Assembly (NCBI GenBank): GCA_024704765.1
Contig: JAKMXF010000188.1
Location: 553,015-617,014, forward strand
From: Oopsacas minuta
Taxonomy: Eukaryota > Animalia > Porifera
DNA length: 64,000 nt
Reading direction: 5' to 3'
Shown piece after piece: positions 4,752 to 60,362 of this stretch (position 1 is its first letter; each line of letters opens with the position of its first letter). Position numbers and translations under genes: made by a program. The notes below the pieces were generated by a model that ran no database searches, was not told where the DNA came from, and saw only the letters and a list, made by a program, of their open reading frames with translations.

Positions 4752-7700
4752 ATGTATTTTTTATTGGGTTTGATACTTTTGACACACCCTCTAGTTAACT
4801 CACAAGGTATGTTTTACTGATTCATCTTTCAAAATAATTAAATTTGGAAATTTTTGTCATATACAGTTAATTAGTATTGTCCACTTGATTACACTGTTAA
4901 AGCTACAAAAACATACGATTGAGACTGTGCTTATAATAAAAGTAATTTAATGGGTATCATTAAATTTTGTTTTAATGATATTAAAATTTTTAATGGTGCC
5001 TGTGCTTAGTTAGAGGACAATATAGGATAGACAGTGGTGTAGCTAGGCTACCAGCTCAGGTGGAGCTTTTTTCTATTAGTAATGAGTCAAGTGGTTTCAA
5101 ATCATGTAATTAATATTTAAACATTACTACCAATTAAGGTATAGACAAAATTTGTATTATCTCTTGGTTCCATCTTCTATCTCATTATAAATTTTGAATT
5201 CTCTACAAAAATTTCGCAAAATATTCGCATATTTTCCATCCTGTGTAATTCAATTCATAAAACGAGCCATTGGCTCGACGAACTCGGCTTGAGCTTCGAG
5301 GATACTTATAGCTGAATATACGGCACCTTTAGTTCCATAATTCATATTTACACATGTCAATTTAACGATGATATCAATAATGTATTTACATTTGTGGAAA
5401 TTACAACTTCGGACTCAGTTTCTCTTGTTACACAATGTAGCCGTAGAGATCAAGTTTCAACCAATATTTTTGTTTACTATATATTCATAAAGCAACAATA
5501 AATTACATATGAGAAACTTGAAAATGCGAAATTCGGATTCAGCGCGATTATTCATTGTACAACCTTTATGGGAGCTACCATGGCCATGGCACCTGACTGG
5601 ATCAGAGAAGCCTGGGGCCATTTTGATATCCTCCCTAAAACGAGAACATATAATTATTACCCAAATATTGTGACCATTATTCGATGAATATAGATTTTAG
5701 AGACCCCTGAGCATGAGAGCCAGGCCGAATGGCCCTCCTGTCCCTCCTATTATAGTGCTGGGAGCTACCATTCTAGAATGTAGCCATGAACTGGCGTTGT
5801 CACGCTATATCTAGTCTGCCCTCTTTATTATATAAATTGCTCGTCACGAAGTTTAATACAGGCTTTGTGGGGGGTAATTACCAAGGCCAAATTGGTCACT
5901 GTACTAAATTCACGCAGTTATCCGGTCACTAGATCAGGTATTTTGACCCAAGCTCCGAATTACAAATCTATAATTTTAACTTGCAATTGTTTTCTGTTTG
6001 TCCATTGTCAAGGAGAGGATTTATGGAATGTTTATTGAATAAATAGGAAAGTAAAAGAATTCCATAAAACTTGAGTAAATATATTGCATATGTAGAATCT
6101 TATTTTCACACTTTTTGAATTAATCATATATATATTTATTGTTGTTCTTATCAATATAAAGTAAACATTAAGATGAAATCTTAAAATATTCGTAGAGACT
6201 TGCTCTTAACAGCTACTATAGGGTAACAAAGTACGATGAATCTGAGCTGAATTTCGCATTTTCAAGTTTCTCATATATAGATTTTTGGTTGTTTTTATGA
6301 ATAATTAAGTAAACAAATAGTTGACATATATATTAATTAATCCATTATTCAATTTTATACTTTGCTAAATTCGAGGCACGAAGTGCAGAGTCCCATGAGA
6401 ACACAAAGTGTTCGCGAGCCGCGAAGCTGCTCGTACGTATGTAATTCATAAAAGATATATACAGTAATCCCTGGAAATATCTCTCAGCAACAGTACAAAT
6501 AGATAGGTAGATCCACAAATACTACAATTAGTAGATGGAATAGTAACTCATTCGAAATATATCCCATACTTAGTAACCAGGGCAAGCTACACTTTAGAAA
6601 ATATGTTCCTTACTTCTCCATTATTAGAATTATCAGGCGGACATTATGCTACAGATAAGTTCCGGCCGGACCTAATGTTGGGGGATCAAATATTATGGGT
6701 ATCATTATAGTTTGTTTTATTAATGAAACAATATATATTGGTGCCTGTACGAATTGCATGTATAGCTATAGTTGTATACTGATCTTTGATACAAGATGCA
6801 AATTCTTAATCAATTTGTATATTTAGTTCCTCTAACTGGTTGTGATGCAATAACAAATGAAGGCATATGTTTCAGCTATTTCACAAGCTCTGGCATTAAC
6901 TGGACTCAAGCTAGAGATGAGTGCCTGACATGGGGAGGAGATCTAGCTACAGTGAGATCTGAAGAAGAGAACATGTTGCTGGTCAGTACTCATGCAGAAT
7001 CTAATGATTGTTGGATTGGAATTAACGACATAGGCAATGAAGGCACATTCGTTTGGGCGGATGGTAGTAATGGTACATTTAGATTCTGGAATCCTGGTCA
7101 ACCGGATAATGGTGGAAATGAAGATTGTGGACACATACCTGGCCTAACGAGGTGGAATGACCTCCAATGTTTTCATACTCGGAGTTGTCACTACTGCAAT
7201 ACTATGGGTGAGTAATTTGCATGAAATGTCTGATCATAGTCTCTGTAGATTACTAAATTTGTGGCTGATCGTCAATTTATTAGTATAGATTATAAGATTT
7301 CAAATATCTTTTTTAACAAGTGGCGGATTCCATTCTCCTTTAGAACTATGCATTTTCGTCTGTAAAACCGAGTGGTTGCACCCACCATTCAAATTGTCAT
7401 GGTACGCCACTGCATGGGAACAACAACAATAAGTTTATATATAACAAACAGGTTTGAGGCTGATTATGATTACAGATGCAGTTAACATATCGTAACTCGA
7501 AACCTGAGCGGAAATCAAAATATGTTCGAGATAGTTTATGTTCAAGTTAACAGATGAGATAAGTACTAAAAGTACAACGAAAGGAAGTGAATATTCGTTC
7601 GAGATAATGGGCATTCGAGTTACCGGATGTTGACTGCATATAGATAAATTATAGATTGAGGTATTTGAGCCAGTTATTCAACATCTGTTGATCAAAATAT

Positions 7701-10700
7701 TAGCAATTTCAATAGTCGAGTAACTCCCAAGTACCACCGTATCGATTACCCCACAAGTACTAATTACTTATCCCAGTTGAAGTTGAGAACTGACTGTCTT
7801 ACTGATCTCAAATTACCAGCTAAATATTATAAGTAATTCTTGTAGTAAACGTCTTTGGACAAGTCAATTCATCAGTATACTCTCCATTAGAAGAGAATAC
7901 TATTCTCACGACAGACACAACTCTCTACTGTGTCACAGAAAATTTTAACACACCCCAAGTACTTTGGAGCTATCTAGATCTGGCTAGTATCAGAAATGAT
8001 CTTACGAGTATGTCTGCAATAGATGTGACTACAGGAGTTAGTACTCTTTATGTAAGGAGTGATCAGCCAGGATATTATAGTTGTGAAGTCTCTCAGGATG
8101 GAGGGATGAGCAGAACTTATACAGTTGAGATGGTCAATACTGATTTATATCCAGGTACTGTCCACATAATTATTATCCTACTACTACTGTATCATGTGCG
8201 AGCTTTTAGTGCTTATGTATAAATACTTTGTTATCGAAAACATAAACAAAAGAAATTCCTCAATGTCAGCTAGTAGTTGTTTGGCCCTGAAAACTGTTCA
8301 ATCAAAATGAAAGGGCAACATCCAAATAGTGTATGCATTTTAGAGTGTTATGGTAAGTTAAGAATATTAGAAGCCATGGCCTACTTAATATACGGCTAGG
8401 TATGTCACTGAGAAGTCCAGAAAAGAATAAGGCCAGTTTTATTATTTTCATTTTGAAAAACGAAGCCCCTTATTAATTGCAAATTGAACTGTCCTCTTCC
8501 TTTCTGGACTTCTCGGGGACATATCTAGCCGTATATTAAGTAGGCCATGTGTAAGATTTCGTTTGGCGAGCATGGACCTATGAAGGGGTTTGTATAGGAT
8601 GTCACTAACGCAGGGGGCTTTACACATTCTCATTATAGTTCCTCCAACTGGTTGTGATGCAATAACAAATGAAGGAATATGTTTCAGTTATTTCACAAGC
8701 TCTGGCTTCAACTGGGCTCAAACTAGAGATTTGTGTCTGGAATGGGGAGGAGATCTAGCAACTGTGAGGTCAGAACAAGAGAGTATATTGTTAGAAAGTA
8801 TAGGATCTGTAGATTGTTGGATTGGAATAAATGATATAGATAATGAAGGATCATTCGTTTGGGCAGATGGTAGTACTAGTAGTTACAGAAACTGGGTTCC
8901 TGGTCAACCTAATAATGCTCGTGGTAATGAGGATTGTGGACATATAGTAGGTCAAAGGGAGTGGAATGACCTCGCATGTACTGAACCTCGTTCACGCTAC
9001 TACTGCAATGCTATGGGTGAGGAATATTCCAACCATAATTGCATAATACTGATATCCAATTCTCCAGGCTATTTGTAGAAGTACAAATATTCTGAGAATT
9101 TCATTAACAAGTTAATCTTCAATATTTATATTCAAACATGTTTTGATTACAGTGTGCAAAGTCTTTTAAGTCAACAAAATTAATCTATATTTAATCTCAA
9201 TTTGCGTCTGTGTGTGTGTGTGTCTGTCATGCTCCCATATAGAAAACATACAGGTTCAGTTCATAAAGTCCAGTATCAAATATTACGCAATATAACAACA
9301 ACAAAACAACAAAGTACTGGGGTAATCGATTATCTTGAGTCCAAATATGATATTGTAAACAACATTTCATAAATATTTGTTTACTTTTGGGGACATAAAG
9401 TAAGCATATTTTAAAGATTATGGTAGTATCATGTTTGCTACGGTTAAGATTATGAATTTATGTACTCAAGGAGAAACCCAGATAAATTAATTCATCATAG
9501 CGAAAAATACTTGGTTTTTCCAAATTTATCACAAAAATTGAATATTCAGAAATTCATCGTAGAATTCCCCACTTATAGAGGTAAATTCCAATGCTGTGAG
9601 GCATAATTATCTCTTAATTATGCCCCATTCCCCACTCTCCTGTTTTATAGGTTATTTTCTATGGAAATGAATGAAAGTGAACCAAAATTGCCCCACTTAT
9701 AGAGGTTTGCACTGCATTTGTAGTTTTTACGAATATATAGTAATCAAATTCGCCAAATCTCAAAATATTGGTAGAGACTTGCTCTCAACTGCTACAATGG
9801 GGAACAAAGTATGCTGCTGAATCCGAATTTCACCTATTCACGTTTCTCATATGTAAATTTATTGCTGTTTATGAATATACAGTAAAATTCTAAACAGTTC
9901 CAGGAATTTGGTTTCCACTGTTATTCAAGGGTAATGGAGTACACTTATCCCAAATATGATAATGTCAACAAAGTATTGTGGATATTTAAGAGAAATTTCT
10001 AGAAAGTCTTAGAAACTTGGTTTCAATGGTTATACCGTTGTAATCGAGTCTGCTGATTCCGATTTTCGCATTTTATAGGTACTCATGTGTTAATTATATT
10101 TGTTCTCATGAAAGATTTGTGCACGAAGTGTAGAGTTACATGGGAACACAGAGTGTTTGCAACGCGAGCAAGCGAAGCGTCTCGTTCTTACTTGATTTGG
10201 ATTGAAGTTTTGTATTAATCTAAGATTATTAACATATCTATAGTATACCCATTTGGACAACTGAATTCCTCAGGATACTCTACAATTGAAGAGAATACTA
10301 TTCTAACCACAGACACTACTCTCTACTGTGTTACCGAGAGTTTTAACTCACCACAAGTAAGGTGGAGCTATCTAGATCTTGCTGGGCGTAGAACTAATCT
10401 CATTGCTTCAACGGAATCTGTCACAGGAGTTAGTACTCTATTTGTAAGTAGCATTCAGCCAGGCTACTATAGCTGTGAAGTTACTCGGGATGGAGGGATG
10501 AGTAGAACTTATACAGTTGAGATGTTCAACAAAGATTTGAATCCAGGTACAATCCCGTATTATTAAATATTTAGTATTGTTAATCTATTCTATACTGAAC
10601 ATTTGGATTCGAAATTCCAGTTGACTGCCACCATTCTTAGCTGCAATCGAGTAATTATTCAGAACTCAGTACTATTTCTATTAATATTTCTTATGTAGTT

Positions 10701-52735: not shown

Positions 52736-54469
52736 CCTGTAATTTATATTTGTTACAGAATTTGTCCTAAAGTAAAATTAAGTTATGGTTTATACTATTT
52801 ATCCTACATGTAATCTCTCTATTTTGAAAACTTATATTTTATCTCCGCGAATAAGATAGTAAAACAATCTAACGAACTGATCCTTATCAGATAGATAATT
52901 AAGGTAATTGTTAATTATTTGTGCTTGTTTTGGTATTGTCACGCCAGCCAAAAGTTATATGGTCCCCTCTGACCTCATTTAGCTGGCCAAATTTGGTCGC
53001 CAAAAATGTTCTCTATAGTTCAGATTAGGTCCCTCGGGCCAGTTTTAGCCAAACATAACTAGTCTGGGGACACTTTTGGTCGACTAAAGTTGGTCCAGGG
53101 TCAAAATTTTTGAAATATCTCACCGACTTTCAAATTCGTTTACGGTAAAATTTAGAGTACCCCGAAAACAGAACAATATTGTGTACTTATTGATGTCCCG
53201 TAATTCGCTAATAATAGACACAATTCACACAAAAGATGTTGCAGTTTAGGGACGTGCTTGGTGTGCGCGCGTGCACACCAGTGTAATCGCGTGTATACCA
53301 ACATGGTAGACCAACATGTTGGTGTACACGTGTGCACACTGGTGTATGGCCATGCAATAATAAAATGTTCTCTTCTGGTTCTTTATTAAATAATATAATT
53401 AGCGATACATAGTTCTAATTATAGAGATACAAATATATTTAATTATAGTATATATATCTTAACTTTCCATAACAATTCAGTAATATGCAGAAATAGATTT
53501 TCAGTAATATGCAGAAATAGATTTCTATTCAGCTCGGAACCTCAATCTATCACTGGGGAAAAGTACGTAATTATCTTTGTATTTTGACTTGTTTGTTCAG
53601 TTTATAGCGATAGCAGACACAGAGTTTAAGGTTTGTTTGATTTGTGTCTATTTAGTAATAAATGTCTTTGGTTAATTGTTCCATAATTGTTCAGTTCGTA
53701 AATGGTCAACATTCTATTATAGTAATCTGGGATTTCTTCTCACAGAAATTTACCATAATTCTTCGACTGAAACACTTCGAAACCATTGTTATGCATGTAC
53801 TTGTGTCCACATTTATTACTAATCTACAAGGTTGAAACCAATTGAACCGAATATCAGTATTATGAATAGCAACCCAACCGGTTACTGATTTCGGTTTGCA
53901 ACCGAATATTGAACTATTCTCCAAACACAGTATTATTCGGTTGCAAACTTGCTAATTAATTTGTGTCTAGAATTTGTTCCCATCCATTCTAATCCAATCC
54001 ATGTTTGGATAAGACGCACACTCGGATAGTACTGAAAATATTGTTCCCCTCGGTGTACTGTTTTCCCCGAGTTCCACTTTTCGTAATTACCTTTAGCAAA
54101 TTGTTTTGAACAAACAATTAAGATTACTTACTACACTACTACATGGATGGCCTAGTAACTAGAACATCTTAATATGAACTAGATATGAACTAGACTCTAG
54201 TTCATATCTAATTACGTTACAACGGTTAACTCCGTACTGTTACCACATAATAATTCCAAATTGTCCAATACAAATTATTTATAATCTGCTTGACTACTCG
54301 TGTAGCGAAGTGTCTGTATTATCCAATTTAAAATAATTTTTGAGACTGAGCAATAAATCTTTATTTTATTCTAATTATAAACTAATGATTTGACAACTTA
54401 AAAGTCCTAAAAAATATTAAGTGATGACTTGTGTTATACGTAATGACTATTCTCTCTGCTAGTAGTATG

Positions 54470-56513
54470 TTATGTGAACTTGTTAAAACAAGTGTGACCC
54501 TTATGGCATTTAGTGTTGCAACTTCTACCTTATTTCTTGCAAGGGCACCTTAGTGTTTTACAGTGCTTACATCTACATGCTGAACCACTGAGCTCCAGAG
54601 AAGCACTTTGCATTGCTCCCGTTTGACTGACTATAGAAGTATGGCAAGACTCATTTGCACTGATTCTGAATGGACAAACATCACTGATTCCTTGCATAGC
54701 CAGAGGAAATAGTGCCATGTGATGTAGCTACAGTATAAATAGGATCCTGTGCGTCGATGATATGACCCATAAGATTGCGTGGTCCAATCGAACTCATCTT
54801 ATCAGGTTGGGAAATGGGTATAAGCACAGTATCACCGATTTCAGCTGGTTTGAATTTTTTCCCACTTGACTTTAGCATACGATCATGTAGTGTTTCCTGA
54901 TTTCTTTTTATTCCTTTTCGTAAATGATGGGTATTTGTACTCTTTTCTTTGGGAAAACAACCTTGATACCACACTGAGCTCCCAAATCCCTCTTCCCCTT
55001 GTTGAATTCCGCAAGGTATGTGGACAAAACGACAACACTCAGGGCAAGAGTATACTCCACTTGTTTCATTCTCACATACAGCACAAAGTTAGTTGAATTG
55101 GTTGGATTTATATTTGAAACTATTGATGAACTACTAGATAGACGTCTGATGGGAAACTGTTTCTCAGTAATTAAATTATCTGATTCAAGAGCTCTAATTT
55201 GATTCTCCAGAATTACTGGAATACTTGATGTTGGGGTTTCAAAATTACTGTTATATTCTATACCATCGACAATTGTGCCAGGTGGAACTGTATCTAATAT
55301 TGAGAATTCATAATCGTCGGAAATAGGCGGGAACTTAGATAAATATGGAGACTGGTTCATTAGGATACTCTTCTGTATATGTAGGCACTTCGTTATCAGA
55401 CAAGTTAGATGATTCAGATGATTCATGAACAGATGCTGAGATTGGATCAGCAACAGATGTTTGTTAAAAGTTATTCAAATCGTCTTCGTTATTAATCACA
55501 CCTCAATGTTCTTTAGGAACATTAAGAGTGGCGAGTCCGAAGAATGGAGGTCTGCCATATACAGCTTCAAATGGCGTCATTCGAATAGTTGTATGGTAAC
55601 TTGTGTTGTAGTTAAATTTTACCCACTTTAAATACTGTACCCAGCATTGATTATTATTATTATCATGCATCATGGCAAATAATCCGTCTTTAACTTCTCT
55701 ATTCACACATTCTGCTGCCCCCTGACACTCAGGATGCCTGGGTTTGCCATGCACAATTTTCGTAGAGGGCCAAGTATCTCGCAAAGTTTCGAATAGAAGG
55801 CGATTTGAGAATTCTCCTCCATTATCAGAATGCAATATTAGAGGTGGGCCTTGATCGCAGAATATTTCAATTAAAATATCACGAACATTTTCTGCTGTTT
55901 TTCTAACTACGTAGTGGGACCAAGTTTATTTTTTTGGTAAAATGGTCAATGTAGACAAAAAGGTATTTATAGGGTGTGACTCCATCTGGTGACATGTTTT
56001 CAGCCAGATTCATATCTCTGAAATCTATGAGATCAATTTGACCTCTGCTCAGGTAATTTCTTGATACGATTGGCTTGGTAACTACAGACTTTATGGATTT
56101 CTTTCCCCTTTTTAGATGGCAAGTTGGACACATTTTGACATAAATACCACACAGTTCTTCAGTAACTCCAAGTAATATTGACTAACTCTCTTACACAATT
56201 TTGTCCTTCCTGAATGTTCGTGATTTTTGCGTGAAATTCTTCTAGGACATCGTAGATTTCATTACTTACCAATACTCTATTGGCATTGTGTCTGTTTGCT
56301 TCACGAAGGTATAGGGTTCCAACACTTTGATATGAAAGAAGTTTAAATCTATTCTGAACCCTTTGTCACTTTTGTCTTGCATTTTTTCTGTAGGTTTCTG
56401 TGATTTCAGGATGCAGATTTTTGCTCTATTTCTTCAGGTGAGAATATATTAATGGGTGAATCAGCCAGTTTCTTCTCGTCAAGAATTTTTATGAACTCTT
56501 CTCTTCCGGTAGG
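54470..56513 (-). pseudogene. KRBA2/SCAND3-like (Ginger2) integrase/transposase, frameshifted
   Basis: HHCC finger (H..HEHSGR...CPTC), then RGQIDLIDF, YIDHFTK, LHSDNGGEF, GKPRHPECQGAAECVNREVK (DDE core), then a Cys/His finger (CPECCRFVHIPC), IGDTVLIP..RN and a C-terminal CRCKHCKTLRCPCKK..CNTKCH..CFNK. Several frameshifts and stops, e.g. at about 56410, 56350, 56230, 55903 and 55503. Confidence 0.88.
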
Positions 56514-56552
56514 ACCAGGGTTCAATTCAATATCTCCCGATAAAAGGAGAAG
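56511..56552 (-). other. 2A-like StopGo (ribosome-skipping) motif LLLLSGDIELNPG/P
   Basis: CTT CTC CTT TTA TCG GGA GAT ATT GAA TTG AAC CCT GGT CCT matches D(V/I)ExNPGP exactly. It lies in an ATG-less open frame (56406-56642) that continues into TGREEFIKILDEKK, the transposase N-terminal region. Confidence 0.85.
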
Positions 56553-57123
56553 AATAGATAGATTTGGATATTTCCTTAATGATAACCATCGTGAGAAAGG
56601 AAATAGATGTTGTCGTTTGGTTTGAGATGAAGGGGAACGATATTAAGAAACAATTTGGTAAGGCGCTGATGGTGATTATAAAATGCAACAAATATCTACG
56701 AGTTATCTGATTTTATCAAGTTAACCGGGATACACTTAGAGCTCGGATGGATATGTAGAGTACTTTTATAGAATTGAAGATCATCATTTGTCACCAATGG
56801 AATTAAGGATATAGTCCGTGCTTCGAGCTCGAGACCCACAATGTTTCCATGTAGAATGTACATAAAATACATTATTAGTAATATAATGACGAACTTTGGA
56901 ATGAAAATCATTGTATAATACAAGCAGTATTCAAGAAGATAAATATATCTTTCCTTGTGCTTGAGTATATATGTATTTAATATTTCCTCCAGCATACATT
57001 GTAATGTTGTCACAAATTATGTCATATTATTTTATATTAATTATTGATATTCCCTTTCATTTCTAGGTGCTAGCAACTCAAATACTTTTTCAAAGGATCG
57101 TGAAACATTACGATGTTGATAAC

Positions 57124-57185
57124 AATGATATAATAATGATATAATAATGATATAATAATGATATAATAATGATATAATAATGATA
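57124..57185. repeat. 11-bp minisatellite, about 5.6 copies (AATGATATAAT), inside the Ginger element
   Basis: Direct inspection. Confidence 0.92.
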
Positions 57186-58310
57186 ATTAATGCACTGCAA
57201 CATATTTATTATGTTTAATTTCGTATTTAGTAAAGAACCAGAAGAGAACATTTTATTATGGCATGGCCATACATCAGTGTGTACACCAAGCACGTCCATA
57301 AACTGCAACACAAGCACTTAAGTTTTGTCCAATTTTTGAAATCTCAAAATTTGAAAAATTGCTTTGTCATCATCACCTCCACTATGGTGACGTCATGGTT
57401 ATGGTGGCCAATGCGTCCCTCCTAATATCTACTACACTTCATCAAATGTAAGTATTTCTCTAGCTGCATTGTTATAAAGTTCTTTGCGTTTCAAGTTAAA
57501 GTGGTTAATGACGTTTTTTTGACAAAATGGTCCGGGAGGACTATTTTTGTCAAATGTCAATATCCATGGTATTTGACAAAAAATGGTCCCCCCGGACCAT
57601 TTTTGTCAAAACATCTGTACAGAATGAAATTGTAATACCAATTATACTAAGATCCTTGGTAGGCGCAGCAGAAGTTGATAAATTTAGTTTTTATTCTACA
57701 AAATATAATTACTAGCAAAGAAAGATAAAATTGAATTTACGAATATTCATAGTCATTCTAAAAATGTTAAAATCGAATTCAACGTCCCTGTTTACCACTA
57801 TTTAGCAATTGGAAGCTAATCTCTGGGATTATTTTGAACTGTTTACCAAAAGCTGTGAAAATATGATTAATCATATGATAAATCAGTGTATATATATTTA
57901 ATAGAATGTATTGACCAATAGAATTACAGTCTGCATCATTACTAATTAAATTACAAACATTCCACCAAAATTAATTACATGCATTCATGCATAATTGTAA
58001 AAACCTACAATCTGATTGGTTTAAAATACAGCTGTCAAAAGGTATTAAATATACACATTAGAAGTTCCCAAATGTCAGGTGTACAACTAGATGTTACGAC
58101 GAGTATACGTACAAAATTGGTAACTTAATCTCTAAAGGTGTGAACAGCAGGGCGAAATTAGAGGAAGAAAGGTATTCAATTGATTGATCCCATGGTATCA
58201 AATAGTACCTTGAATAACTCAGTGAATGTATAAACACACTAATCACTATAATTGGGAAATAAACAACAAATAATAATAATAATAATAATAATAAATAATG
58301 GGACAAGAGA

Positions 58311-60362
58311 TTAGAGCATCTGTAGACAGTTGTCCTCTTTCATGTCACCAACTGTAACATAGCCAGATCGTTGTATAAATATGCAAGAGGGACGGAATAT
58401 TTGACACAATCCATGTCCTGTTTCACAAACTGTTTCTATGAATTTACCAAACTGGTCAAACACTTTGATGGAATTATCCCAGAAATCGCATATGTATATT
58501 CTCAATTCATCTGTGATAGGATTATAGAACAGGTTGAAGTTGTATGCTCCTACAATCTGATCCTCTGTAAGTATAGACACTATGAATTTTCCTTCTAGAG
58601 AGAACCTTTGTAGAGGAGAGGGAGATCCTGTGAAGAGACATATAACACAATTATCAACAACCTTCATGTCCTGTAGTCATGGATACCTGTTGGGTATCTT
58701 GGTCTGCAGAATAGGATTAAGTGGGTATTCTTGTTCTATACAGAGAGGATCTACCTGTATACGGATGAGACTGGGCTTAAGAGTCCCCACATACAAATGC
58801 GTACTGTTAGAGGAGGTACAACAAGCCTGTGGTATTGAGATGTGGTGTTCACGATTCATGCTAAATATATGCATACTATCTTCCCATGTTAAGCTGAATT
58901 GTGCTAATAAACTTGTATAGCACACGAATAAGGACTGTTTGAAGTATGTCAATGAGACAGGAGTATCAGGCAAACGAGGAGAATGATGCGAAGACTTAGC
59001 TACAAGATCATCAGCTCTGAGGACTGTGATTGTATCACCGTATCTATCCGCTACTATTACGTTATTCATAACCGCAATTATACCAGCTGGTGTATCTAAT
59101 TGGTGACCTCCTTCTCCACCTCTATCAACACCAGATGCCACAGGGATGTTCCTTTCTTCTTTGGGTGGAGCTATCAACATGGGATCGTTATCAGTGTCGA
59201 TAGCAAATGAAGGAATGTTTATTCTGTTGTCGTAATAGCGACGGATTGCTCTTTGTAAAAGATCATATATATCCTTCAAATCCTTATCCTCCTTATTCTT
59301 CCTGACGAGATATTCTAGTGACCTAGCGTCTCTGTACAGGAAAGATAGTTCATTGAATGTGAAAGTCACATTCTCCTCAACAAGTGCATACATATCCTCC
59401 ATCTTTATGCAGTTCTCTTCTATCCTATCTGCATTTCTGGTTTCCAACTCATCTCTAGCTATCGCACACTCCATATTGAGTCTGTTTAGCCTCATGTCAT
59501 ACTCCTGACGTGTGATACCCCCGGGAAGCAGGTCTCTCTTGGATGGATTTACTGGTTTCATATCTCCCTCTATTTCAGGATCTACATAGAAAATGAATTC
59601 TCCATCAATCAAGTGTGTCGCTCTCTCCCTCATTAAATATGAACACCAAGGTTCTGGAATAGGATAAGTCCTCATCTTTAAGATCTCTGCCTTCAGTCTC
59701 AGTCTCAGAGATTCGTATCTCTTTACTATCACACTCTCGATCGGTTTTGGGAGTTTAAGCTCTAGCCAATTCTGAATTCTATGAATCTTTTCCTCAGCTG
59801 TCTCCTTCCACATGATGAGACCGTTTAGGGAGTATAGGGAAGGTTCTGCTAGAGTCATCTCTATGTAGTAGAGGCTGTCTTTGATTTCAATAGGAAGGTA
59901 GTCATCGATGATTAGTAAAGATATTTTATGTAAATGCTTGTCGTATCGCTCCTGGAATGAATCTTTGAGAGGGATAGGAAGTATTTTACTGGAGATTACA
60001 GATTCATAATCTTTGTAGAGAGCTGGTAACTTGATAAGAATTCTACCAATGATTACGTTATATGGTGCTATAATTCCTTCCATTTCATTGAGGATATTTG
60101 GTATCCTAACAATATTCCTGTACTCTTGTATTATTCCGGTATATCGTGCCTTCAAGGATACACGTGTTTCTTTGGACAGTATGGAGGCCTTCTTGCTATT
60201 TAGAGTTTCCATTTCCAACTGGAACCCTCTAGACAATTCGGAAATTTCGTTAACTGTAATTTCTTGTAAGTCAATGGACAGAATTTCCTGTAATCTATCC
60301 TTGTACTTCTTCAACATCTTCTCAGCTTTTGAAGGTGTTACCTGGCTCATGTTTGTTGCCAT
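58311..60362 (-). CDS. Intronless gene: helical/coiled-coil N-terminus plus NHL-like beta-propeller C-terminus, with one in-frame TGA (58677-58679); pseudogene or readthrough gene
   Basis: ORFs 58677-60362 (561 aa) and 58311-58667 are in the same frame, separated only by TGA CTA CAG GAC; combined 684 codons. NHL-like motifs: LDTPAGII..VIVADRYG, IYICDFWDNSIKVFDQFGKFI, GLCQIFRPSCI. Confidence 0.75.

What the first reader, a model, noticed from the sequence alone, without database searches (positions are those of the whole stretch)
56406..56642. 2A StopGo peptide directly upstream of a Ginger2 DNA-transposon integrase
Seen: on the minus strand, ...RWLSLRKYPNLSILLLLSGDIELNPG/PTGREEFIKILDEKK..., in a frame the ORF track misses, inside TGT..ACA TIRs and in frame with the start of the transposase region. 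Known: D(V/I)ExNPGP preceded by a Leu-rich helix causes ribosomal skipping; it is described in RNA viruses, in non-LTR retrotransposons ahead of the APE domain, and in some sponge, sea-urchin and amphioxus genes. I know of no description in cut-and-paste Ginger transposons. Inference: this family makes its transposase as the downstream product of a polyprotein, released with an N-terminal Pro, which would be a novel expression or control strategy. The motif is intact although this copy is frameshifted.
Basis: partly seen in the sequence, partly recalled or inferred. Interest (0 to 1): 0.85.

Follow-up and report, generated by a model that had tools for sequence, protein, structure and literature searches.

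The report
StopGo 2A peptide in a DNA transposon
A decayed cut-and-paste (Ginger2-type) transposon of the glass sponge Oopsacas minuta belongs to a clade whose transposase is encoded behind a ~130-residue hydrophobic leader and a canonical ribosome-skipping 2A peptide, a context I found described nowhere for DNA transposons.

Summary
GDIELNPG|P lies on the minus strand at 56537-56511. It is the only match in the window (0 in 100 shuffles) and one of 9 in the 61-Mb genome (0 in the reversed control).

It sits in a 4,074-bp element (53237-57310) with TGTTGCAG termini and an HHCC+DDE transposase of the KRBA2/SCAND3 (Ginger2) kind. This copy is a pseudogene.

- Another Oopsacas copy reads leader, 2A and zinc finger as one open frame.
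- Relatives in six other ENA assemblies have uninterrupted 488-500-codon first exons. Each holds a Met, a hydrophobic leader, the 2A, the HHCC finger and the DDE core.
- All 2A-bearing lineages form one clade (100/96).
- The 2A peptide is kept through many synonymous changes (dN/dS 0.04-0.2).
- These lineages have no Met after the 2A for 52-166 codons (129-166 in four of the five open frames long enough to reach one). 2A-less relatives start with Met one residue after the skipped Pro.

The polyprotein architecture is therefore well supported. Actual ribosome skipping is inferred, not shown. Published screens report that Leu-rich eukaryotic 2A-like peptides sometimes skip and sometimes only lower protein output.

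I found no description of a 2A in a DNA transposon. Verdict: new variant of a known kind, interest about 0.7.

The parts
53237..57310 (-). Whole element: a decayed copy of a Ginger2-type cut-and-paste transposon, 4,074 bp
   Evidence: Inverted termini. About 13 copies or fragments in the genome at 77-100% identity. All copies begin TGTTGCAG.
57224..57310 (-). 5' terminal inverted repeat (element sense), terminus TGTTGCAG
53237..53392 (-). 3' terminal inverted repeat, with about 65 extra bases (a hairpin at 53275-53345) between its two matching blocks
   Evidence: pairs I1, I2, I3.
56514..56911 (-). Leader coding region. It runs from the conserved ATG (56911-56909) to the Gly codon before the skipped bond. 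In this copy it is broken by a stop (56698-56696) and a 1-nt deletion near 56641.
   Evidence: Homologous leaders start with Met plus a hydrophobic stretch in five other lineages. Breaks.
56511..56564 (-). 2A/StopGo peptide NLSILLLLSGDIELNPG|P. The Gly codon is 56516-56514 and the Pro codon is 56513-56511.
   Evidence: The residues reported as critical (L6, L7, G11, D12, E14, N16, P17, G18, P19) are all present.
56409..56642 (-). The open stop-to-stop piece that carries the 2A in this copy (78 codons)
54470..56513 (-). Transposase remnants in several frames: N-terminal region, HHCC finger (about 56240-56110), DDE core (56181-55506), Znf_SCAND3 finger (55088-54684) and Cys-rich C-terminus (to 54470). 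Frame-breaking indels lie near 56423, 56383, 56172, 55906, 55355, 55086 and 54684.
   Evidence: Pfam rve and Znf_SCAND3; frame map; indels against other copies, which agree table 4.

Best explanation
The window holds a dead copy of a Ginger2-superfamily DNA transposon of Oopsacas minuta. In its intact form the gene is one reading frame made of three parts. First comes a leader of about 125-130 residues: a Met, a strongly hydrophobic N-terminal segment, a poorly conserved middle, and a second hydrophobic stretch. Next comes a class-A 2A/StopGo peptide, (L/I)LL(S/A)GD(I/V)E(L/S)NPG|P. Last comes the HHCC-DDE transposase. Ribosomes start at the leader ATG. At the 2A the Gly-Pro bond is skipped, the leader is released ending in ...NPG, and translation goes on to make a transposase that begins with Pro. 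That Pro lies one residue before the position where 2A-less relatives have their initiator Met. In the 2A-bearing clade that Met is gone, so passage through the 2A is the only route to full-length transposase. The 2A therefore sets the ratio of leader to transposase and probably damps transposase output. Shown here: the architecture, the frame, the single origin, purifying selection on the peptide, and the loss of the internal start. Inferred: the skipping itself, its efficiency, and what the leader does.
For: - The motif is not chance: 1 match in the window against 0 in 100 shuffles; 9 matches in the genome against 0 in the control.
- It is in frame with the transposase in natural uninterrupted ORFs. 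The Oopsacas C199 copy gives 223 codons from leader through zinc finger. P0153/P0173 (496 aa), P0168 (498), P0175/P0176 (495), P0186 (488) and P0188 (500) each hold Met, leader, 2A, HHCC, D, D and (all but P0175, which has an E-motif substitution) E. These ORFs end at a canonical GTAAGT...TTTTAG intron of 59-60 nt.
- A transposase tree built without the 2A puts the 11 2A-bearing rows in one clade (100/96). That clade is sister to 2A-less P0132/P0146.
- The 18-residue 2A has dN/dS 0.04-0.2 among the closer lineages (up to about 0.46 against the two most divergent), with dS 0.65-3. Its G, I, L, N, P, G and P codons differ synonymously between lineages. The leader has dN/dS 0.27-0.71.
- 2A-less relatives begin M-S-R-(I/V)-(E/Q)-F aligned with (P)-T-G/R-R-E-E-F.
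- After the 2A the first Met is at +129 to +166, inside or past the zinc finger (+52 in P0015).
- All residues reported as critical for class-A activity are present.
- A near-intact relative (L065) has 98-100% identical 330-bp TIRs, the same TGTTGCAG termini and a 4-bp TSD.
Against: - No experiment or expression data here shows skipping. The public runs found are of unknown kind and gave no sense-strand information.
- In a published high-throughput screen, eukaryotic peptides ending LLLLSGDIELNPGP fell into mixed classes: skipping with reduced protein, non-skipping with reduced protein, or fall-off only.
- All Oopsacas copies seen are broken. Within the genome, 5 intact motifs among the 11 copies that retain the motif is what neutral decay would give.
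- The hosts of the six ENA assemblies are unknown.
- The leader has no recognisable family or confident fold.
Confidence: 0.72

Rival explanations
1. The motif is conserved but works mainly as a translational attenuator, a membrane-targeting segment, or both, rather than as an efficient separating site. Ribosomes fall off or output drops at the Leu-rich 2A. Alternatively, unskipped chains are tethered to the ER by the hydrophobic leader, so only a small fraction becomes free nuclear transposase. This would be self-restraint or dual targeting.
For: - Leu-rich eukaryotic 2A-like peptides with the same core are often classed 'reduced protein levels' or 'fall-off only'.
- N-terminal 2A-like sequences of sea-urchin NLR proteins act both as signal sequences and as recoding sites (PMC4981915).
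- Every leader starts with Met plus 15-22 hydrophobic residues. In P0153 and P0126 a second stretch of about 20 hydrophobic residues precedes GD(I/V)E.
- Odon et al. proposed down-regulation of the downstream product for retrotransposon 2As.
Against: This differs from the best explanation only in degree, because both need the 2A to act on the ribosome. The Oopsacas-type leader has a shorter pre-2A hydrophobic run. Signal-peptide status rests on a hydropathy count alone.
Confidence: 0.2
2. The leader and 2A are a separate upstream reading frame or a passenger relic. The transposase would be started independently, by a non-AUG start, an internal start or a spliced transcript, and the 2A would have no role in its expression.
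For: This window copy has no continuous frame. P0152 and P0170 were called from internal Met codons that lie upstream of the 2A. Introns do exist in the family.
Against: Leader, 2A and transposase share one frame without a stop in many natural copies. There is no AUG for 129-166 codons after the 2A in four of the five open frames long enough to reach one (52 in P0015), while that stretch is homologous to the N-terminus of 2A-less relatives. The 2A peptide is under strong purifying selection. No sense-strand joints were seen.
Confidence: 0.05
3. The motif is a chance match, or a fragment of a 2A-bearing LINE that landed in one transposon copy.
For: 2A-like motifs are best known from non-LTR retrotransposons. 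Four other 2A motifs exist in this genome.
Against: The expected chance count is about 0. All 14 genomic matches to the 341-bp 2A region lie in copies of this same element. The motif is present in all deep branches of a clade found in seven assemblies. No reverse transcriptase or endonuclease lies nearby.
Confidence: 0.01

Closest known systems
2A-like sequences near the N-terminus of ORF2 (and ORF1) of APE-type non-LTR retrotransposons (Odon et al. 2013, PMC3708506; L1Tc/Ingi of trypanosomes)
   Same: A mobile element places a short leader and a Leu-rich GD(V/I)ExNPGP ahead of its enzymatic protein, always at the same N-terminal position. The proposed role is to separate an upstream product and damp the downstream enzyme.
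   Different: Here the element is a cut-and-paste DNA transposon and the downstream protein is an HHCC-DDE transposase, not an endonuclease/reverse transcriptase. The leader is longer (about 125-130 against 40-80 residues) and has its own N-terminal hydrophobic segment.
Ginger2/TDD DNA transposons and their domesticated derivatives KRBA2 and SCAND3 (Bao et al. 2010, PMC2836005; PMC3575427)
   Same: TGTNR termini, TIRs of tens to hundreds of bp, 4-bp TSD, an H2C2 finger plus DDE core, and no GPY/F or YPYY motifs. The nearest named proteins are KRBA2 / SCAND3-like, including one from Trichinella.
   Different: The Ginger2 description that was read (keyword passages only) mentions no leader or 2A. 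2A-less relatives in the same tree start directly with Met.
N-terminal 2A-like signal sequences of sea-urchin NOD-like receptor proteins (Roulston et al. 2016, PMC4981915)
   Same: A hydrophobic 2A-like segment at the front of a cellular protein. It can both target the chain and recode, giving two fates from one ORF.
   Different: Those sit at the very N-terminus of host immune genes. Here the 2A is about 125 residues in, behind a separate hydrophobic N-terminus, in a transposon gene.
Viral class-A 2A peptides (FMDV F2A, T2A, P2A; type C rotavirus NSP3 ...ILISGDIELNPGP)
   Same: The same core octapeptide and upstream Leu cluster. The rotavirus C core SGDIELNPGP is identical to the one here (file 2).
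   Different: These occur in RNA-virus polyproteins. There is no homology outside the peptide.

Membership tests
Class-A 2A / StopGo peptide | Core (G/H)D(V/I)ExNPGP | tested here: met
   GDIELNPGP at 56537-56511. The same core with I/V and L/S variants occurs in all 2A-bearing lineages.
Class-A 2A / StopGo peptide | Hydrophobic Leu cluster 12-14 residues before the skipped bond (L6, L7) and Gly at position 11 | tested here: met
   The sequence is ...SILLLLSG before DIELNPGP, so positions 6-9 are LLLL and position 11 is G. The criteria come from mutagenesis summarised in 10.64898/2026.09.24.754024.
Class-A 2A / StopGo peptide | The reading frame continues from the Pro into a downstream protein | tested here: met
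   Met in L025, P0153, P0176, P0186, P0188 and others. In the window copy the frame stops 35 codons after the Pro, owing to a 1-nt deletion near 56423.
Class-A 2A / StopGo peptide | Two separate products made from one ORF in a eukaryotic translation system | not testable with these tools
   This needs a reporter or in vitro translation assay. A related peptide from the C338 copy is listed in a published library, but its measured class is not in the stored part of the table.
Ginger2/TDD superfamily of DNA transposons | Terminal inverted repeats of about 50-300 bp with TGTNR termini | tested here: met
   TIRs of 87 and 156 bp; the terminus TGTTG is found in all copies. L065 has about 330-bp TIRs with the same TGTTGCAG. 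The criteria come from PMC2836005.
Ginger2/TDD superfamily of DNA transposons | 4-bp target site duplication (metazoan members) | tested here: met
   TAAA in L016, TTAA in L022 and CATG in L065. It is not met for the window copy itself: its flanks are AAGA and CAAG.
Ginger2/TDD superfamily of DNA transposons | [quoted passage not shown] | tested here: met
   Pfam rve above its cut-off and Integrase_H2C2 below its cut-off. Regex finds HHCC, D, D and E, and no GP[YF] or YP.Y.
Ginger2/TDD superfamily of DNA transposons | Groups with reference Ginger2 transposases rather than Ginger1, Gypsy or Polinton integrases | tested here: inconclusive
   No Repbase references were at hand. The nearest named homologues are KRBA2 (Trichinella, insects) and SCAND3-like proteins, which PMC3575427 derives from Ginger2. 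Pfam Znf_SCAND3 also matches.

The most novel reading that the evidence does not exclude
A clade of DNA transposons in glass sponges (host identified only for Oopsacas; the other assemblies are presumed sponge) acquired a secretory or membrane-type leader plus a StopGo site once, then gave up its own start codon. Transposase synthesis is thereby obligatorily coupled to, and throttled by, ribosome skipping on ER-targeted ribosomes. Skipped chains would yield free nuclear transposase. Unskipped chains would be membrane-tethered and inactive. The released leader may itself be a functional small membrane protein of the element. A second, unrelated TIR-flanked repeat in the same genome that carries DVEVNPGP near its 5' end would mean that 2A use by DNA transposons is recurrent in this lineage.
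Probability: 0.3. Interest if true: 0.85.

Novelty: new variant of a known kind. Interest (0 to 1): 0.72.

Why it matters
StopGo is regarded as a device of RNA viruses, with sporadic use in retroelements and a few host genes. A cut-and-paste DNA transposon that depends on it would widen the known range of natural recoding. It would show that a mobile element can replace its own initiator with a polyprotein arrangement. It would also give a clean natural test case, because sister lineages exist with and without the 2A, for asking what a 2A buys a selfish element: stoichiometry, self-restraint or targeting. The family also supplies short natural 2A variants from an early-branching animal, together with near-intact elements (L064, L065) on which transposition assays could be built.

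Tried and rejected
- **Chance occurrence:** rejected.
- **LINE fragment:** rejected. All matches to the 2A region lie in copies of the same element, and no RT or APE domain is present.
- **Leader function:** no Pfam family and no ESM-Atlas look-alike. The AlphaFold2 model on an 8-row alignment has pLDDT 44, with only the two hydrophobic helices modelled, so no fold search was run.
- **Expression:** the four runs found belong to one study and are of unknown kind, held as contigs. They give no sense-strand evidence and no sense-strand introns.
- **Earlier scan notes:** nothing found.
- **Measured activity of the Oopsacas peptide:** LSNLSILLLLSGDIELNPGP (C338 copy, P0040) is listed in the library of bioRxiv 10.64898/2026.06.17.732966. 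The stored classification table is cut before the letter L, so its class could not be read.
- **Selection within the Oopsacas genome:** 5 of the 11 copies that retain the motif have it intact. That is compatible with neutral decay, so only between-lineage comparisons were used.
- **TSD of the window copy:** the flanks do not match.
- **Second 2A-bearing repeat family:** no Pfam hit on its ORF pieces.
- **Host identity of the ENA assemblies:** could not be established. The only pointer is a Vazella pourtalesii transcript in 2A-less clusters.
- **Consensus:** none was built. Broken copies were read with X at breaks, for the tree only.

Full report
**Observation.**
On the minus strand, 56642-56409 translates to ...FSRWLSLRKYPNLSILLLLSGDIELNPGPTGREEFIKILDEKK..., followed by a stop at 56408-56406. 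The core GDIELNPGP occupies 56537-56511, and the skipped bond would lie between the Gly codon 56516-56514 and the Pro codon 56513-56511. A back-translated pattern for D(V/I/M)ExNPGP matches once in the window, and none of 100 dinucleotide-preserving shuffles gave a match. In the whole 61.46-Mb assembly it matches 9 times, against 0 for the reversed-pattern control. The piece has no start codon, which is why the mechanical ORF list misses it.

**Host and element.**
A 402-aa annotated protein of the glass sponge Oopsacas minuta is 100% identical to the integrase ORF of a sister copy. Another copy's 2A piece is Oopsacas LOD99_8591.

The element spans 53237-57310 (4,074 bp) on the minus strand. 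Its inverted termini are 53237-53264 with 57283-57310 and 53330-53392 with 57224-57286. All copies begin TGTTGCAG. The genome holds four near-full-length copies and about nine partial ones, at 77-100% identity. Matching 4-bp target duplications flank two Oopsacas copies (TAAA, TTAA); the window copy's flanks (AAGA / CAAG) do not match.

The coding remnants hit Pfam rve and Znf_SCAND3. Intact relatives have an HHCC finger and D, D, E motifs, and no GPY/F or YPYY motif. Their nearest named homologues are KRBA2 (including Trichinella) and SCAND3-like proteins. These features fit the published definition of Ginger2 (PMC2836005; PMC3575427). I could not place the protein against Repbase references, so that one membership feature stays inconclusive.

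**State of the window copy.**
It is a pseudogene. Compared with the other copies it has:
- a stop in the leader (56698-56696);
- 1-nt deletions near 56641, 56423, 56383 and 56172;
- a 4-nt insertion at 55906;
- deletions near 55355, 55086 and 54684.

These come, and the indel table shows the same indels. The 2A motif itself is intact. The deletion near 56423 ends its frame 35 codons after the Pro.

**Is the 2A in frame with the transposase?**
Yes, in natural unbroken sequence.
- The Oopsacas C199 copy has a 223-codon open frame that runs from the leader through the 2A (mutated there to NLGP) into the zinc finger, and ends at the contig end (L025:2053-2721).
- The C310 copy keeps one frame with a single stop.
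- An exhaustive HMMER search with the C199 ORF found divergent relatives (36-65% identity) with D(I/V)E(L/S)NPGP at the same place.
- Cluster look-ups gave complete first-exon ORFs of 488-500 residues in three deep sublineages: P0153/P0173 (496), P0168 (498), P0175/P0176 (495), P0186 (488) and P0188 (500). Each has Met, a hydrophobic N-terminus, a leader of about 125-130 residues, the 2A, HHCC, D, D and (in all but P0175) the E motif.
- These ORFs stop at a canonical intron, GTAAGT...TTTTAG: 60 nt in L064 (6465-6524) and 59 nt in L065 (6198-6256). After it a second exon encodes the Znf_SCAND3 finger and the Cys-rich C-terminus.
- L065 is nearly intact. It has 330-bp TIRs that are 98-100% complementary, the same TGTTGCAG termini, a CATG duplication, one stop in the leader and an open second exon.

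I examined the two exons separately and did not join them.

**Is it selected?**
The 2A-bearing sequences come from Oopsacas and six ENA assemblies of unknown host. I built a maximum-likelihood tree of the transposase region downstream of the 2A, reading broken copies with X at the breaks. It places all 11 2A-bearing rows in one clade (support 100/96). That clade is sister to 2A-less P0132/P0146, then to further 2A-less sponge-type sequences, with KRBA2/SCAND3-like proteins outside. One gain followed by retention is therefore enough to explain the distribution.

Codon comparisons between lineages gave these values:

| Region | dN/dS | dS |
|---|---|---|
| 18-residue 2A (closer lineage pairs; up to ~0.46 against the two most divergent) | 0.04-0.2 | 0.65-3 |
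| Leader | 0.27-0.71 | – |

The G, I, L, N, P, G and P codons of the motif differ synonymously from lineage to lineage. So the peptide is conserved, not the DNA. Within Oopsacas, 5 of the 11 copies that retain the motif have it intact. That is no more than neutral decay would leave, so I draw nothing from it.

**Loss of the ancestral start.**
2A-less relatives begin M-S-R-(I/V)-(E/Q)-F. Their Met aligns with the residue right after the skipped Pro, where the 2A-bearing sequences read P-T-G/R-R-E-E-F. In 2A-bearing sequences the first Met after the 2A lies 129-166 residues downstream, inside or beyond the zinc finger; it is at +52 in one lineage. The conserved N-terminal region of the transposase can therefore only be translated by ribosomes that started at the leader ATG. 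In the window that ATG is at 56911-56909.

**The leader.**
It is homologous across lineages. It always starts with Met followed by 15-22 strongly hydrophobic residues. In two sublineages a second stretch of about 20 hydrophobic residues runs into GD(I/V)E. It has no Pfam family, no Atlas look-alike and no confident predicted fold. A signal-peptide or membrane-anchor reading is a lead from hydropathy only.

**Will it skip?**
All residues reported as critical for class-A activity are present: L6, L7, G11, D12, E14, N16, P17, G18 and P19. The core SGDIELNPGP is identical to that of type C rotavirus. A published high-throughput screen of eukaryotic 2A-like peptides gives mixed results for peptides ending LLLLSGDIELNPGP: one skips with reduced protein, one does not skip but reduces protein, and one shows fall-off only. 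The 20-mer of the Oopsacas C338 copy is in that library, but its class is not in the stored part of the table. Skipping is thus likely but unproven. A mainly attenuating or targeting role is a live alternative.

**Literature.**
No paper in the library holds both Ginger2 and NPGP. The four recent surveys of 2A diversity list RNA viruses, non-LTR and LTR retroelements, NLR, RapGEF, ankyrin and death-domain proteins. None lists a DNA transposon or a stand-alone integrase. Papers that contain both StopGo and transposase are unrelated.

**Verdict.**
The mechanism is a known one (StopGo) in a new kind of carrier: a cut-and-paste DNA transposon that has made it obligatory for transposase expression.

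Noticed in passing
L060 5349-8622 (G000:C308:317348-320621); L063 about 5017-8421; L062 5471-6637: A second, unrelated repeat family in the Oopsacas genome. It is about 3.3 kb long, has about 180-bp inverted ends, and carries ...LFLIICGDVEVNPGP about 630 bp from its 5' end in three copies. The stop four codons after the Pro coincides with a plausible GTTAGT...ATAG intron of 87 nt (L063 5670-5756). Downstream ORF pieces have no Pfam hit. It may be another DNA transposon that uses a 2A.
   Followed up: partly
G000:C323:194122-194144, minus strand (L050): A further intact motif, DIEINPGP, after a Leu-rich stretch in a 104-codon open frame of unknown context. Mariner-like DDE pieces lie several kb downstream.
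   Followed up: no
window 56050-57066, plus strand: In one run only (X4), contigs skip 56051-56113, 56172-56245 (or -56393), 56436-56510 and 56657-57065. All five gaps end GT..AG on the plus strand, which is antisense to the transposase. This looks like a spliced antisense RNA over the leader/2A region of this or a sister copy. The run's kind is not on record, and likeness was set to 90%.
   Followed up: no
window 53239 joined to 57311: Contigs in runs X1 and X3 join the left flank plus TGT directly to the right flank, skipping 4,071 bases. This suggests an allele without the element (insertion polymorphism or excision footprint) in the sequenced material. The window copy also lacks a matching TSD and is 99-100% identical to the C295 copy around the 2A but 94% overall.
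   Followed up: no
L059 3001-5214 (ENA ERZ25069837): An intact 737-codon 2A-less sister transposase lies in the same assembly as the 2A-bearing P0153. The 27 residues before its MSRVQF include NDLREINITF, which the aligner places opposite GDIELNPGP. This may be a degenerate relic of a 2A, which would mean loss rather than gain in that lineage.
   Followed up: partly
window 58677-60362, minus strand: A 561-codon ORF right beside the element, with an N-terminal coiled-coil-like part and a C-terminal repeat region. It continues into the ORF at 58311-58667. It is probably a host gene and was not examined.
   Followed up: no
L060 587-3368: Three long ORFs, starting with a Cys-rich THAP-like N-terminus, lie upstream of the second 2A repeat. 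They look like a P-element/THAP9-type transposase. This was not checked against Pfam.
   Followed up: no
window 53830-53975 and 57111-57200: A segment of the element's 3' non-coding part has several-fold higher contig depth than its surroundings, suggesting another repeat nested or shared there. A short tandem duplication lies in the 5' subterminal region; the reads tool skipped 57163-57187 as repeat.
   Followed up: no
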